A DNA stretch of 64,000 bases, from positions 18,476,001-18,540,000 of the forward strand of contig CM106585.1 of NCBI GenBank assembly GCA_048013815.1, read 5' to 3'. The stretch is from Setoptus koraiensis (Eukaryota; Animalia; Arthropoda). This document shows positions 663 to 24,254 of the stretch, in pieces. The notes under the pieces were generated by a model. The model saw only the letters and a program-made list of their open reading frames with translations. It searched no databases and was not told where the DNA came from. A program made the position numbers and the translations under genes. The first letter of the stretch is position 1. Each line of letters begins with the position of its first letter.

Positions 663-852
663 ATGACACAACGCATCGTCGCCATCACAATTATCATCGC
701 ATTACTTGAACCGTCATTATTACCGTCGGACTGCACTTACGCGTCGCTCGCACCACCAAAAACAAACAAACTAACCCAAATCGCCGCAACAGGTCTCGTC
801 ACCACCCCAGCCAAACACCCCGCAATAAGGCCCCCTGCCACAAATACCAGAG
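663..852 (+). CDS. Cirl: Cirl-like exon 1 (signal-peptide-like MTQRIVAITIIIALL...)
   Basis: GCCATGA start context, hydrophobic N-terminus, donor AG|GTAGGT at 853; phase 1 matches exon 2. Confidence 0.65.
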
Positions 853-21800: not shown

Positions 21801-24254
21801 CTTGAAGGACGAAAGTGTTGTCGCGCCCCCTCCGCCGAGTGCCCTGTTGAATGTCCGCACTTTGTTCGGGGTCCAATTGTGTGACCACTTGATAATGATT
21901 ATCGACTGATCATTGTATTTGATGTGTGCAGCAACAATGGCTTGATTGCCAGGCACGTCATATGACGTTGATCTAATTTACTTCAGCTATCACACAGCCA
22001 CGACCAATGGCAACCGGCCGAAAAGTGATTGCATTAGTTACCATCGCCATCCTCATCATGACAGCTAATGAGACTAATGTGATTCCTCTTCACTGAATAC
22101 ACTACTCACTAACAGATGAGATATTCCGCCACCAAAATAACTAAATAGTTGGCTTGATTGATCGCCACTTGATCGTCGTCATTGTGTGCCAATGTTCTTG
22201 TTGGTCCCCGAACATCGTTCAAATCAAATTGCTGATTGTTGACGCATTGCGAGCAGCATCCAGAATTAGACACAACTGTAACACAACAACAACAACAACA
22301 ATGACAACAACAACAACAACAAATTCACTAATTTAACCATCTCTTTGCTCTCTGTCCGTCTGTCCCCAATCAATCATTAGGTGCTTTCTCTTATGGCCCA
22401 GACAGCTATTTAGCTGCGCAACAAGATGGCACTTTGCCGGATCGGGCCATCGCCAAGTCGCTTTTGTTACCCCCTTTAGTCCAGTCTATAACTATCAATT
22501 TTAAGAATATCCATCAGCTTCAGCAAAGGTGCTCGGCGTGGCCAATAATCACACCAGCAAGCGCTGCCAACAACAACAATAATGGAAACAACAACAATTT
22601 CAATGGGGCTTCATCGCCATCATGCTGGCTAGATTGGTCCAATTCAACAAATTATGTTTGTAAATGTGATCACTTTTCCTACTTCAGTCTGTTGTCCGAC
22701 TCCATAATTGGCATCAATTCAGGTCCCGATGGACAACCGTCGACAACAACAACAAACGGTGCCAATACCCTGTTGCCAGATGCAACTGCCATGGACAATA
22801 CGCTGCAACTATCTAATTATCCGCAACAATCCAGTAGTGTCGGCAACACTGTCAATGGCCAGGAACAATCTCAGCTCAATTCTGCCGATCCCACCAATTT
22901 GGCAAAATCCATTATGAACGGACTGAGACCGGCAACGGCAACAACAACCAATACAACAAGCTGGTTCATGGTGCTCATAATACTGTTGGTGTCCGTCGTT
23001 GTTTTGTTTGTTATATTGTTCCTCATAGGAGCCAACTCAAACAACCTGAATCTATTCAATAGTATTGGTATAATATCAAACAACAAAAATAACGGCAATA
23101 ATGGCGACAATCAGTCTAGGCGGTTTTGTGGGGCTCTAATAGGCCACGGACTGAGCGTTGGCTCATCGTCCAATGGCAGCAACGCACCAACAACCGGTCC
23201 GATTATACCCAGCAGCAATAGCAGTGTTGGCACTAATCAAACCGGTCAATCACCGTTGGGTGCCACTATAATTGGTTCAATGGGACTAAATACCACCGTT
23301 AATGGTACAATTTTGGGCCTGAACACTCAGACTAATCGCCATACACAAAAGCAAATTAGTGAGCTGGCCTCTTCGAATCATTTGAACCTGGCCCCGTCCT
23401 CATCGGCAAGATTGTTTGGTCATTTGTATTGGCTGAGACCCTCTTATTGGCTCAACAGATCCAAACAACATCATCACCATAATCATCACGTTATCAACAA
23501 TGGATTAATTCATCATGCTGGCGGTGTCAATTCTCACCTCAATCAGGCCTCCTCCAATATGTCTTTCAAAACGCATCCATTCCAAAACGGTTACGGCATT
23601 AGCGGCTCTGGCGCTCATCATCACCATCACAACACCATGAGACAGCATCAGCATTCTCATTTACCTATGCAAGCGCCCTCATCGTCAACTTCCTCTTACA
23701 TGTCCTCGTCGGTTTATTACGAAGAAATCGGGCCCAGTACTGCCACTACTATAACAAGTGGCACTGGGGCCAGTTTAATACCTAATCCACATCACACATT
23801 GCTGGCCAATGCAACCCCTGGACAGCCCACAAAAACTACACTTGTTGATCTGTCCAAAATGCCAACTACTACTATTATAAACACTGGCCTATTGTCAGAT
23901 CCTAACCCACTTACATTACATCATTCATCGTCTAATAACAATAACTTGGTTCATTCATCGTGGTCGGCCTCCTATGCTCTCAGTCCCCAACAACAGCAAC
24001 AACATCAGTCAGCTTATGGTACAGCATGTCAGCGCAATGATCTCACCAATAACGGCAATAACGGCAATGGCTCCACATTACATAACTCTGCCAGACACCA
24101 TTTGTTTCAAGCTTCGACAAATCCTTCGTCAGCTTATAAATCGTCGCCCACAATGCATCATCAACAAATAAGCGATTATAAATGCCGGGTGTATCAACCT
24201 GCTGATGGAGACAATCAGCATCAACATTACAACATGCACAACCGACATTTTTGA
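663..24254 (+). CDS. Cirl: Latrophilin/Cirl-like adhesion receptor with a single TM helix; join(663..852,2468..2660,4913..4988,8686..8716,19348..20664,20835..20969,22381..24254), 1271 aa
   Basis: Gal-lectin domain (TTYACEGNQLDLTC...VRANYGRFSLSICN...CMSYRS...CSQQSNCSV...FGDPCPDTSK-YLEVQYYC), HRM domain (CQPSKTRHLYWNYTRRG...CPPGSIGRVEWQC...GPDYTDCKSIWL), GAIN domain and GPS (CSAW...CWLDWSNSTNYVCKCDHFSYFSLL). All six introns are GT-AG with matching phases; total CDS is 3816 nt = 1272 codons. The start codon and the exon-4 acceptor are the least certain points. Confidence 0.85.
2468..2660 (+). CDS. Cirl: Cirl-like exon 2 (lectin domain, N-terminal part)
   Basis: cacag acceptor; HLHSKTTYACEG...FLVMQD; donor AG|GTAAGT. 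Confidence 0.95.
2983..3006. repeat. (GA)12 microsatellite
   Basis: Directly visible. Confidence 0.9.
4913..4988 (+). CDS. Cirl: Cirl-like exon 3 (lectin domain)
   Basis: aacag acceptor; CSQQSNCSVVVSSSMFGDPCPDTSK; donor AAG|GTAATG. Confidence 0.95.
8686..8716 (+). CDS. Cirl: Cirl-like exon 4, 31-nt micro-exon (YLEVQYYCVD)
   Basis: cacag|TACCTGGAGGTCCAATACTATTGTGTAGACG|gtaagt supplies the last strand and Cys of the lectin domain in the correct phase. Confidence 0.9.
11710..12441 (-). CDS. Orphan secreted protein, family A copy 1 (243 aa), nested antisense in the Cirl intron
   Basis: Intronless ORF from MNSQIFAVVTMVLVMSSCSAVVRG (signal peptide); shares the WP..M..VLQ...G, LC..LRSD..FN and NPTVGPLYTATMMC motifs with its paralogues. 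Confidence 0.85.
   Translation of the reverse strand: MNSQIFAVVTMVLVMSSCSAVVRGQGRSQAQVDKIGKAMEKWYQEWKLGPNLKQSLSLGGEAETQRKEKHWPRRMMAVLQVATGLPSSSKIDVKQVARVASGLKYNNLEVQQEFLANVKRFLSRSFTYKDQRNDLDKFDSARDELCAPLRSDKGFNYEQAFTELVLATLEEDVYHGKFIELMVETNPTVGPLYTATMMCKLIDATSVEFGPQKDCTLQFSDSVDDLLANWPYPEIVYIPASAL
12455..14075. repeat. Tandem duplication homology between the upstream regions of copies 1 and 2 (about 12455-12840 vs 13780-14075)
   Basis: Shared blocks such as gaactgatgaaa..caattttatcaag, gaaacttgg(c/t)actatttttag, and atcaaatgcgatctgt(g/t)gatc(c/t)actgc (12783 vs 14016). Confidence 0.85.
13042..13773 (-). CDS. Orphan secreted protein, family A copy 2 (243 aa)
   Basis: Signal peptide MKYFHWIFATAAIVTVVSLSSCVGVRG; identical block VETNPTVGPLYTATMMCKLIDATSVE shared with copy 1. 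Confidence 0.85.
   Translation of the reverse strand: MKYFHWIFATAAIVTVVSLSSCVGVRGQDRSLAQLDQISKELERWFQVPRRSGQKLKPSLRNDLASDADKQSNEKRWPRKMMRVLQVISGLPSSGKIDLEHVKRIAAGVKSNNLSAQQEFIANIKGFLFLFRSFSPNDKQNYSNRFDGLKKELCGPLRSDKGFNYERAITELVQASLEEGHGEDHFIENIVETNPTVGPLYTATMMCKLIDATSVECGPKTECRLDYPENADDLLAHWPYPAN
14106..14822 (-). CDS. Orphan secreted protein, family A copy 3 (238 aa; alternative start 14801)
   Basis: Signal-peptide-like N-terminus; HWPRPIMKVLQEATG, LCAPLRSDIHFNF and DRTIGPLYMAVMLC motifs. Confidence 0.8.
   Translation of the reverse strand: MTSDNHKMKAIGITSLTHTMAMMLIMSQCCLLASGQEQSLAQVEQIRKALEEWFGSEKNLAGSLRTCVHIFIDDAERQSNENHWPRPIMKVLQEATGVAPSSKVDLEKVARITSGLKQNKLLEQVEFLQNIRPFMKGKWQHRNEQEQSVAFLRQKEELCAPLRSDIHFNFKQAISDLIKFTLREDVYRKHFIENNVESDRTIGPLYMAVMLCSVIDDLPPHYNELLGLPKTAAGRVPG
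17467..17574. repeat. Compound (TTG/CTG)n microsatellite
   Basis: Directly visible; it produces spurious polyQ/polyC ORFs. Confidence 0.85.
19348..20664 (+). CDS. Cirl: Cirl-like exon 5 (S/T/N-rich linker, HRM, GAIN N-terminal part)
   Basis: Frame is open from 19314; aaacag acceptor in phase 1; donor G|GTAAGT at 20665. Confidence 0.85.
20835..20969 (+). CDS. Cirl: Cirl-like exon 6 (GAIN: MSRIVFIAFNRIEEYLRP...SPVI)
   Basis: cacag acceptor, AG|GTAAGT donor, phase 1 at both ends. Confidence 0.9.
22381..24254 (+). CDS. Cirl: Cirl-like exon 7 (GPS, 95-aa linker, single TM, ~406-aa tail)
   Basis: ttag acceptor at 22380 in phase; continuous ORF to TGA at 24254; one hydrophobic segment WFMVLIILLVSVVVLFVILFLIGA (22962-23033). 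Confidence 0.9.

What the first reader, a model, noticed from the sequence alone, without database searches (positions are those of the whole stretch)
663..24254. Latrophilin-type adhesion receptor with no 7TM bundle: a dedicated single-pass gene
Seen: the spliced ORF has the arthropod latrophilin ectodomain (lectin-HRM-GAIN-GPS). After the GPS it continues in the same exon through a 95-aa S/T/N/Q linker, one 24-aa hydrophobic helix (22962-23033) and a ~406-aa low-complexity tail to the stop. I found no 7TM-coding sequence anywhere else in the window. Established: in adhesion GPCRs the GPS is normally followed almost directly by TM1 of seven helices, and 1TM splice isoforms have been described for Drosophila Cirl. 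Inference: here the 1TM form appears hard-wired in the genome, either as a derived non-GPCR receptor or as a partner acting on a separate 7TM latrophilin paralogue.
Basis: partly seen in the sequence, partly recalled or inferred. Interest (0 to 1): 0.85.

Follow-up and report, generated by a model that had tools for sequence, protein, structure and literature searches.

The report
Latrophilin-like receptor gene without 7TM
This arthropod (probably mite) genome carries an expressed, conserved gene that has the outer part of a latrophilin adhesion receptor but, in place of the seven-helix signalling bundle, a single membrane helix and its own conserved inner tail. Other species have the same gene, so it is a natural single-pass version of an adhesion GPCR.

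Summary
It continues in the same exon through an 86-95 aa disordered linker, one TM helix (22953-23033) and a 406-aa tail.

Spliced RNA contigs confirm the last two introns. They also run unbroken across the GPS and across the stop codon. Neither tblastn nor a 7tm_2 profile finds 7TM coding sequence anywhere in the 64 kb.

The gene is not a one-off:
- At least ten other sequences from metagenome and SRA assemblies have the same last exon: degenerate GPS, 72-96 aa linker, one TM, 350-450 aa tail.
- Their tails share invariant short motifs (SSYxSSSxYYEEIG, QNGY, PTTGP, WL.RPS.W, RHxLF..AS…AYK).
- Where the contig reaches far enough (four loci), a NASP-type gene lies directly downstream, as in the window.
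- They form one clade beside canonical 7TM latrophilins.
- All but the window's copy lack the GPS cleavage residues.

Best reading: a dedicated non-GPCR latrophilin paralogue that signals through its own tail, and may also partner a 7TM latrophilin. It is a new variant of a known kind; the closest precedent is the Drosophila Cirl 1TM isoform made by intron retention. The mechanism is inferred.

The parts
663..792 (+). Exon 1: start codon and hydrophobic N-terminus (MTQRIVAITIIIALL…), the likely signal peptide
   Evidence: Read from the sequence. The donor is GT and its phase fits exon 2. No RNA evidence.
2468..2660 (+). Exon 2: first half of the SUEL/RBL lectin domain (YACEGNQLDLTC…)
   Evidence: Pfam SUEL_Lectin E 8e-4. 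It is 64-67% identical to the matching exon in L001, L002 and L003. AG/GT borders.
4913..4988 (+). Exon 3: middle of the lectin domain (…MFGDPCPDTSK)
   Evidence: Pfam SUEL_Lectin E 2.5e-7. AG/GT borders.
8686..8716 (+). Exon 4: 31-nt micro-exon that completes the lectin domain (YLEVQYYCVD)
   Evidence: Found by a motif search. AG/GT borders. It aligns with YLEVQYHCV of P0019.
19348..20664 (+). Exon 5: low-complexity spacer, HRM domain and the helical half of the GAIN domain
   Evidence: Pfam GAIN 3.3e-15 and HRM 0.017. The donor is confirmed by spliced RNA contig X6 record 13.
20835..20969 (+). Exon 6: first beta strands of the GAIN domain's second half (MSRIVFIAFNRIEEYL…)
   Evidence: Both borders are confirmed by spliced RNA contigs X6 record 13 and X8 record 27. 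It aligns with P0019.
22381..24254 (+). Exon 7: rest of the GAIN domain, GPS, linker, TM helix, tail and stop codon
   Evidence: A single ORF. The acceptor is confirmed by X8 record 27. RNA contigs cover 22400-22620, 22624-22885, 23609-23828 and 23807-24333.
22659..22694 (+). GPS motif CKCDHFSYFSLL, with His at -2, Phe at -1 and Ser at +1
   Evidence: Pfam GPS E 0.0016-0.006. It aligns with CSCDHLTNFAVV of P0019. AlphaFold models a beta hairpin here, pLDDT about 73.
22695..22952 (+). 86-aa T/S/N-rich linker between GPS and membrane, predicted disordered
   Evidence: Composition. pLDDT below 50. The equivalent linker is 72-96 aa in relatives.
22953..23033 (+). The single transmembrane helix (WFMVLIILLVSVVVLFVILFLIGA)
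   Evidence: Hydropathy peak of 3.73. AlphaFold helix 174-200, pLDDT 88-94. No significant match to any helix of the 7tm_2 profile.
23034..24251 (+). 406-aa cytoplasmic tail, mostly disordered, carrying conserved short motifs
   Evidence: pLDDT below 50 except for one helix pair. Invariant columns across ten sequences. No Pfam family.
23187..23204 (+). Conserved tail motif PTTGP(I/L)
   Evidence: Near-invariant in alignments A1 and A2.
23403..23459 (+). Conserved motif ARLFGHLYWLRPSYWL, predicted as a short helix pair
   Evidence: AlphaFold helices 324-333 and 336-342, pLDDT 61-70. W333, L334, P336, S337 and W339 are conserved.
23583..23594 (+). Invariant tail motif QNGY
   Evidence: Invariant in ten of ten sequences.
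23682..23732 (+). Invariant tail motif SSxSSY(M/V)SSS(V/A)YYEEIG, holding a YEEI tyrosine motif
   Evidence: Invariant columns S417-I432. Present in all eleven family tails examined.
24093..24140 (+). Conserved C-terminal motif RH(H/Y)LF(Q)AS…AYK
   Evidence: Invariant columns R554, H555, L557, F558, A560, S561, A567, Y568 and K569.
24255..24333 (+). 3' untranslated region; the RNA contigs end here
   Evidence: X8 record 30 ends at 24329 and X6 record 15 ends at 24333.

Best explanation
Shown. This is a dedicated, transcribed gene for a latrophilin paralogue that has lost the seven-helix bundle. The product is a type I single-pass membrane protein. Outside the cell it has a latrophilin ectodomain: RBL lectin, HRM and GAIN/GPS. 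Then come a flexible linker of about 90 aa, one helix, and a disordered tail of about 400 aa studded with conserved short motifs. The gene belongs to an unannotated family that sits beside canonical 7TM latrophilins.

Inferred. The ectodomain still recognises latrophilin-type partners on other cells or in the matrix, because the lectin domain is about 60% identical to the canonical one. Because there is no 7TM domain, the signal cannot pass through a G protein. It most likely passes through cytosolic proteins that dock on the conserved tail motifs. The invariant YYEEI is a candidate phosphotyrosine (SH2-type) or YxxΦ sorting site.

Self-cleavage and tethered-agonist release are not part of the family's core mechanism. 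Every relative examined lacks the +1 Ser/Thr, and most also lack the -2 His. Only the window's copy keeps both. Pairing with a separate 7TM latrophilin may occur in addition.
For: Gene model and expression:
- Seven GT-AG exons give an open 1251-aa frame.
- Spliced RNA contigs confirm the last two introns. Other contigs run continuously over the GPS and over the stop codon.

Ectodomain: the product aligns with 7TM latrophilin P0019 at E 8e-87, and the alignment ends exactly at the GPS. Pfam supports the domains.

No 7TM: tblastn and profile searches are negative in the window and in all 1TM loci, while the controls L002 and L009 are positive.

Family:
- The same last exon occurs in L001, L003, L004, L005/6, L007, L008, L010, P0159, P0161 and P0162.
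- 36 columns are invariant across ten sequences, most of them in the tail motifs.
- The tail profile hits only these loci.

Positional orthology: a NASP/SHNi-TPR gene lies directly downstream on the same strand in the window and in L005-L008, at 47-56% identity.

Tree: a 25-row 1TM clade has support 100. The window is its sister (support 85), next to 7TM latrophilins.

Structure: only the GPS hairpin, the TM helix and one helix pair are modelled confidently; the rest is disordered.

GPS residues: relatives have CxCD[R/K/H/T]FG[F/L], that is, Gly at +1.
Against: - No experiment shows any binding partner, phosphorylation or signalling; the mechanism rests on motif conservation and analogy.
- YEEI as an SH2 ligand or YxxΦ signal comes from general knowledge, not from a test here.
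- RNA contigs leave 22886-23608 uncovered, which includes the TM helix, and no RNA was laid on exons 1-4.
- Minor isoforms cannot be excluded with assembled contigs.
- The window's placement as sister of the 1TM clade has only moderate support (85, quick tree). The window's tail is the most divergent in the family.
- The 5' end (start codon, exon 1) rests on sequence reading alone.
Confidence: 0.6

Rival explanations
1. It is an obligate co-receptor of a separate 7TM latrophilin. The single-pass protein has little signalling of its own. Through its ectodomain it binds the 7TM paralogue encoded elsewhere in the genome and tunes that receptor's G-protein output, as Cirl-1TM does for Cirl-7TM in Drosophila. 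On this view the mite lineage has split the two isoforms into two genes.
For: - In Drosophila the 1TM and 7TM forms interact through the N-terminal fragment, and both are needed for mechanosensation (10.1101/2023.01.11.521585; review PMC13197933).
I did not check that note.
- Canonical 7TM latrophilins form the sister clade and come from the same kinds of samples.
Against: - The tail carries many invariant motifs across at least eleven sequences. A mere membrane anchor would not need them.
- No sample in hand was shown to hold both paralogues.
- No interaction data exist.
- This reading does not exclude tail signalling.
Confidence: 0.3
2. It is an ordinary 7TM latrophilin gene whose 7TM exons lie outside the window or were missed. 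On this view the single-pass product is only one isoform made by reading through an unused splice donor.
For: Drosophila makes 1TM forms from a 7TM gene by intron retention. RNA contig coverage of exon 7 is incomplete.
Against: - There is no 7TM signal in 40 kb downstream, which is filled with other genes on both strands.
- The NASP-type gene follows within about 2.3 kb here and within 0.6-1.7 kb in L005-L008.
- RNA contigs are unbroken for 200 nt past the GPS and across the stop codon.
- The tail is conserved, as expected for coding sequence.
- In tested members of the sister clade the 7TM sits in the same exon as the GPS.
Confidence: 0.03
3. It is a decaying remnant of a latrophilin gene, or an assembly artefact that fuses unrelated pieces.
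For: - The Pfam scores for HRM and GPS are below the gathering thresholds.
- The sequence is rich in low-complexity runs.
- The DNA contigs of run X1 break at a (CAA)n repeat at 22273-22330.
Against: - An open 1251-aa frame across seven GT-AG exons.
- Spliced transcripts that bridge the repeat-containing intron.
- The same exon order and neighbour gene in independent assemblies from other species.
- Invariant tail motifs.
Confidence: 0.02

Closest known systems
Drosophila Cirl-1TM isoforms (Cirl-J, -F, -K), made by retention of intron 6 (Bormann et al., bioRxiv 10.1101/2023.01.11.521585; Cell Rep 2025 as cited in PMC13197933)
   Same: Both have a latrophilin ectodomain (RBL, HRM, GAIN/GPS) anchored by a single helix, followed by a tail unrelated to the 7TM receptor's tail. 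Both are expressed proteins rather than a truncation artefact.
   Different: - Here the form is the only product of its own gene, with no 7TM exons, and is conserved as a family.
- In the fly it is a splice variant of the 7TM gene, whose helix is TM1 and whose tail is 207 intron-derived residues.
- Here the helix lies 72-96 aa after the GPS and shows no detectable TM1 similarity.
- Here the tail is 350-450 aa with invariant motifs.
- Most family members lack the cleavage residues, whereas fly Cirl-1TM is cleaved.
Canonical arthropod latrophilin/Cirl (ADGRL-type adhesion GPCR), for example P0019, P0023 and locus L002
   Same: The lectin, HRM, GAIN and GPS domains come in the same order and are alignable end to end (E 8e-87). 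The lectin domain is 55-67% identical. The two groups are sister clades in the tree.
   Different: This gene has no 7tm_2 domain and has a long linker after the GPS. Its tail matches none of the 35 7TM-bearing relatives. Its GPS catalytic residues are mostly lost in the family.
7TM-independent ('trans' or N-terminus-only) function of C. elegans LAT-1 (summarised in PMC13197933; primary papers recalled from memory, not read here)
   Same: The concept is shared: a membrane-tethered latrophilin ectodomain can act without G-protein coupling.
   Different: In the worm this is a second mode of a 7TM receptor, shown with engineered constructs. Here evolution has fixed a 7TM-less gene that also has a conserved cytoplasmic tail.
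GAIN/GPS proteins of the polycystin-1/REJ group, including single-pass sea-urchin REJ1 (recalled from memory)
   Same: Both have a GPS-containing ectodomain on a non-GPCR membrane anchor.
   Different: No REJ, PLAT or polycystin domains were found by Pfam in the exons scanned. The ectodomain here is clearly latrophilin-type.

Membership tests
Adhesion GPCR, latrophilin/Cirl (ADGRL) type | N-terminal SUEL/RBL lectin domain | tested here: met
   Pfam SUEL_Lectin matches two exon pieces (E 8e-4 and 2.5e-7). The domain is 55-67% identical to canonical latrophilins.
Adhesion GPCR, latrophilin/Cirl (ADGRL) type | Hormone-receptor motif (HRM) domain before the GAIN domain | tested here: inconclusive
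   Pfam HRM scores E 0.017, 15.9 bits, below the gathering score of 26.2. The region does align with the HRM of P0019, including the cysteines.
Adhesion GPCR, latrophilin/Cirl (ADGRL) type | GAIN domain ending in a GPS motif | tested here: met
   Pfam GAIN E 3.3e-15. GPS E 0.0016, below the gathering score. The alignment with P0019 runs to the last GPS residue.
Adhesion GPCR, latrophilin/Cirl (ADGRL) type | Secretin-type seven-transmembrane domain (7tm_2) directly after the GPS | tested here: not met
   There is no 7tm_2 in the ORF. tblastn gives nothing below E 1.6 and the profile gives nothing below E 0.81 in the six-frame window. There is only one hydrophobic helix.
Adhesion GPCR, latrophilin/Cirl (ADGRL) type | Autoproteolysis at H-L|T/S in the GPS | not testable with these tools
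   The window has H-F|S, so the His and the Ser nucleophile are present, with an unusual Phe at -1. Ten relatives have Gly at +1, most with R/K/T at -2. Cleavage needs a protein assay.
Cirl-1TM-type isoform (Drosophila) | Made from the 7TM gene by intron retention | tested here: not met
   There are no 7TM exons in the locus or in orthologous loci. The next gene is NASP-type.
Cirl-1TM-type isoform (Drosophila) | Latrophilin ectodomain plus a single helix plus an alternative tail | tested here: met
   Architecture as listed under parts.
Cirl-1TM-type isoform (Drosophila) | Physical and functional pairing with the 7TM form | not testable with these tools
It needs co-immunoprecipitation or genetics.
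New single-pass latrophilin-like family (defined here) | Last exon with GPS-like CxCD.F motif, 70-100 aa linker, one TM, and a tail with SSYxSSSxYYEEIG, QNGY and RHxLF..AS…AYK | tested here: met
   The window matches the tail profile (it was one of the four sequences the profile was built from) and shares all invariant columns.
New single-pass latrophilin-like family (defined here) | NASP/SHNi-TPR gene directly downstream on the same strand | tested here: met
   The window's NASP-type gene is at 26584-27909. L005-L008 have the same arrangement at 47-56% identity. In the window one small extra gene (25159-25749) lies between.
Polycystin-1/REJ GAIN proteins | REJ, PLAT or polycystin channel domains | tested here: not met
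   No such Pfam hits in the exons scanned.

The most novel reading that the evidence does not exclude
In this arthropod lineage the 1TM/7TM isoform pair of latrophilin has been split into two genes. The single-pass gene then acquired a dedicated cytoplasmic signalling tail whose invariant YYEEI motif couples latrophilin-type cell contact to phosphotyrosine (Src/SH2-type) signalling instead of G proteins. It no longer needs GPS cleavage. This would be a new signalling route for an adhesion-GPCR ectodomain.
Probability: 0.25. Interest if true: 0.8.

Novelty: new variant of a known kind. Interest (0 to 1): 0.66.

Why it matters
Adhesion GPCR research is debating what these receptors do without their 7TM domain. 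The evidence so far is engineered N-terminus-only constructs in worms and an intron-retention isoform in flies.

Here a 7TM-less latrophilin is fixed as its own gene and kept across many species. Its cleavage residues are mostly lost and its tail is conserved and rich in motifs. Three things follow:
- The ectodomain has a selectable function that needs neither G-protein coupling nor tethered-agonist release.
- There are concrete motifs to mutate: YYEEI, QNGY and RHYLF…AYK.
- There is a comparative handle on which ectodomain features serve adhesion and which serve 7TM activation.

The family is also missing from annotated protein sets and from Pfam recognition. Only the window's copy gives even a weak GPS hit. 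GPCR censuses in these animals will therefore either miss it or miscount it as a broken latrophilin.

Tried and rejected
- Searching the 5.8-billion-protein word index with the four-sequence last-exon alignment returned nothing, because low-complexity words swamped the candidates. Repeating it with the first 290 residues of the L004 exon worked.
- A search with P0020's HRM-GAIN region, meant to reach long annotated proteins, returned only P0020 itself. Whether annotated proteomes hold the family therefore remains open.
- The tail profile found nothing among 150+ latrophilin relatives, including 35 with 7TM domains. The tail is therefore not the canonical latrophilin C-terminus.
- Pfam on all ten last exons gave no family beyond a weak GPS hit in the window. 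A profile search of PDB sequences gave only a CELSR1 match at E 0.72.
- The single helix could not be matched to TM1 or to any other helix of the 7TM profile; all bit scores were negative. Its origin is unknown.
- I tried to show that one sample holds both the 1TM and the 7TM paralogue. The contigs came from different runs.
- Searching papers for the run and sample accessions to name the organisms gave no hits.
- The protein atlas gave only generic leads: GPS/GAIN clusters and single-pass proteins with disordered tails, all with scores of 0.84 or less.
- P0033 looked like a 7TM-less relative in Pfam. It is a mis-modelled 7TM latrophilin.
- The full GAIN domain was not folded. It spans three exons, and a spliced protein cannot be passed by reference.

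
Full report
**What is in the sequence**

The + strand between 663 and 24254 holds seven exons with GT-AG borders: 663-792, 2468-2660, 4913-4988, 8686-8716, 19348-20664, 20835-20969 and 22381-24254. Together they give an open frame of 1251 codons. The difference is probably a matter of splice-site choice, and the 31-nt micro-exon at 8686-8716 (YLEVQYYCVD), which completes the lectin domain, is easily missed.

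Pfam results on the exon pieces:
- SUEL_Lectin in two exon pieces.
- GAIN (3.3e-15) and, weakly, HRM in exon 5.
- GPS, weakly, in exon 7.

The weak scores are not a worry. The spliced product aligns with a canonical 7TM latrophilin (P0019, 1292 aa, with SUEL-HRM-GAIN-GPS-7tm_2 by Pfam) from the lectin domain to the very end of the GPS. The alignment has E 8e-87 and 30% identity over 716 residues, with the lectin part at 55-67% identity. It stops at CKCDHFSYFSLLSD against CSCDHLTNFAVVMD.

**After the GPS**

In canonical relatives, TM1 starts about 12-15 residues after the GPS. Here the same exon continues as follows:
- an 86-aa T/S/N-rich stretch (22695-22952);
- one strongly hydrophobic helix (22953-23033);
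- 406 further residues rich in S, N and H, up to the stop at 24252.

An AlphaFold model of the exon-7 ORF, built with nine relatives, is confident in only three places. These are the GPS hairpin, the TM helix (residues 174-200, pLDDT 88-94) and a small helix pair at residues 324-342. Both the linker and the tail are predicted disordered.

**No 7TM**

- tblastn with the 7tm_2 regions of six relatives finds nothing better than E 1.6 anywhere in the 64 kb.
- A profile built from those regions finds nothing better than E 0.81 in the six-frame translation.
- The same profile scores 1.8e-45 and 1.3e-38 on the control loci L002 and L009.
- The 40 kb downstream is occupied by other genes on both strands. 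The first substantial one is a NASP-type SHNi-TPR gene at 26584-27909.

**Transcripts**

Three runs labelled with another organism (X6-X8) hold this organism's mRNAs. Their contigs give the following:
- One joins 20663/4 to 20834/5.
- One joins 20966-9 to 22378-81. Both joints are GT-AG once the letters that fit on either side are resolved.
- Others lie unbroken on 22400-22620, 22624-22885 (across the GPS and 190 nt of linker), 23609-23828, 23807-24329 and 24130-24333 (across the stop codon into a short 3'UTR).

The last three exons are therefore spliced as modelled, and the tail is transcribed as one piece with the GPS exon.

Limits of this evidence:
- These are assembled contigs at low depth.
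- 22886-23608 is not covered.
- Exons 1-4 were not examined.
- Rare isoforms cannot be excluded.

On the DNA side, contigs of run X1 cover 19460-22272 and 22331-25299. They break only at a (CAA)n repeat inside intron 6, and the spliced RNA contig bridges that break. An assembly break is thus unlikely.

**A family, not a one-off**

An exhaustive HMMER search with the HRM-GAIN exon found only 32-38% identical best hits. Most were exon-sized fragments from metagenome and SRA assemblies. Fetching their contigs showed two kinds of locus.

In the first kind, the HRM-GAIN exon is followed some kilobases later by one long exon with these features:
- a degenerate GPS (CxCD[R/K/H/T]FG[F/L]…L);
- a 72-96 aa linker;
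- a single helix followed by basic residues;
- a 350-450 aa tail.

This kind comprises L001, L003, L004, L005/L006, L007, L008 and L010. P0159, P0161 and P0162 are further last exons of the same type.

In the second kind, GPS and 7tm_2 follow in the next exon. This kind comprises L002, the contig of P0018, and L009.

The tails of the first kind and the window's tail share a series of invariant short motifs. The sequence between them is otherwise variable and low in complexity:
- PTTGP(L/I)
- SIIG
- WL.RPS.W(L/F)
- QNGY(TT)
- SS.SSY(V/M)SSS(A/V)YYEEIG
- T.(V/I)D(PF)
- NDL
- RH(Y/H/F)LF(Q)AS…AYK

A profile of the tail hits only these loci. It hits none of the 150+ latrophilin relatives in hand, 35 of which carry 7TM domains.

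Wherever the contig reaches far enough (L005-L008), the next gene on the same strand is the NASP/SHNi-TPR orthologue, 47-56% identical to the window's. That is positional orthology. It also leaves no room for 7TM exons.

A quick maximum-likelihood tree of the HRM-GAIN region shows the following:
- All members known to have one TM fall in a 25-row clade with support 100.
- The window is sister to that clade, with support 85.
- Together they sit next to a clade of 7TM latrophilins that includes L002.

The careful tree search did not finish, so the window's placement rests more on the tail motifs and the synteny than on the tree.

**GPS chemistry**

Canonical latrophilins have H-L|T. The window has H-F|S, with the tethered-agonist-like spacing preserved (SYFSLL against TNFAVV). 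All ten relatives have Gly at +1, and most have R, K or T at -2, which removes the nucleophile.

By established knowledge of GAIN autoproteolysis, those copies should not cleave. Whether the window's copy does is untestable here. Cleavage and release of a tethered agonist are therefore not conserved features of the family, which fits the absence of a 7TM to activate.

**How it most likely works**

Shown:
- It is a type I single-pass protein with a latrophilin ectodomain.
- It has a disordered but motif-conserved cytoplasmic tail.
- It is encoded by its own conserved, expressed gene.

Inferred:
- The conserved lectin/HRM/GAIN ectodomain still engages latrophilin-type partners.
- The output goes through proteins that dock on the tail motifs.

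The invariant YYEEI matches, from general knowledge, both the preferred ligand of Src-family SH2 domains once phosphorylated (pYEEI) and a YxxΦ sorting signal. This is a lead, not a result.

The main rival is that the protein is chiefly a partner of a separate 7TM latrophilin, as Cirl-1TM is for Cirl-7TM in Drosophila. There the two forms bind through the N-terminal fragment, and both are needed for mechanosensory discrimination (10.1101/2023.01.11.521585; PMC13197933). I could not inspect it. The two readings do not exclude each other. The degree of tail conservation is what makes me favour a function of the tail itself.

**Comparison with what is known, and novelty**

The architecture has a precedent as a splice isoform: fly Cirl-1TM, which consists of TM1 plus 207 intron-coded residues. 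The idea of 7TM-independent latrophilin function also has a precedent in C. elegans LAT-1.

What I did not find described in the papers I could search:
- a separate gene and gene family for such a form;
- a long linker after the GPS;
- loss of the cleavage residues;
- a conserved tail of its own.

The family has no named or annotated member in the databases I could reach. My searches for long annotated proteins were limited, so annotated genomes may still hold it under a generic latrophilin name.

I rate it a new variant of a known kind. It fails the defining 7TM test for adhesion GPCR membership, yet it is plainly a latrophilin paralogue.

**Organism**

The relatives and atlas clusters point to Arthropoda. 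Earlier notes of this scan call it an intron-poor, tiny mite. I did not test that.

Noticed in passing
window 11710-12504 (-), 13042-13773 (-), 14106-14822 (-), 25159-25749 (+): Three intronless genes for about 240-260 aa secreted-looking proteins lie antisense inside the 10.6-kb intron 4 of the latrophilin-like gene. A fourth paralogue lies between its stop codon and the NASP-type gene. By eye they share motifs (HWPR…MKVLQ…GLPSS.KIDL…CGPLRSD.GFN). Pfam finds no family. This is also noted in s1-349815.
   Followed up: partly
window 26584-27909 (+); L005 7930-9129, L007 7168-8391, L008 12315-13538: A NASP/SHNi-TPR histone-chaperone-type gene lies directly downstream of the single-pass latrophilin-like gene in the window and in three complete copies from other species, at 54-56% identity. 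In L005 and L008 it is followed by an AMP-binding enzyme gene and a MIF gene. This microsynteny is conserved across otherwise very divergent genomes.
   Followed up: yes
window 22273-22330: A (CAA)n-type microsatellite in intron 6 is the only place where the DNA contigs of run X1 break. Similar repeats at 19459-19492 and 23988-24008 attract many false joints from other loci in the read-laying output.
   Followed up: partly
window 19300-25299, runs X6-X8: Runs labelled with a different organism (organism D) contain spliced mRNA contigs of this genome's genes. They are probably RNA from a host or mixed sample that carried the animal, and could be a source of expression data for other windows of this genome.
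   Followed up: partly
window 28041-28409 (-), 28799-30313 (+), 30695-31801 (+), 31863-32615 (-): A compact block of apparently intronless genes. By eye they look like an RNA-polymerase Rpb6-like subunit, a WD40 GRWD1-like protein, a syntaxin-5-like SNARE and a chromodomain protein. This contrasts with the 23.6-kb, seven-exon latrophilin-like gene next door. They were not scanned against Pfam.
   Followed up: no
window 38846-41073 (-): Long minus-strand ORFs with animal haem-peroxidase-like motifs (…FIDHDMT…), apparently split over frames or exons in a GC-rich stretch (GC 0.52-0.57). Seen by eye.
   Followed up: no
P0033 (1242 aa, database protein): A database latrophilin model without a Pfam 7tm_2 hit turned out to be a mis-predicted gene. 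It has intron read-through in the middle and a partial 7TM that my profile detects. It is a caution against counting 7TM-less latrophilins from automatic models.
   Followed up: yes
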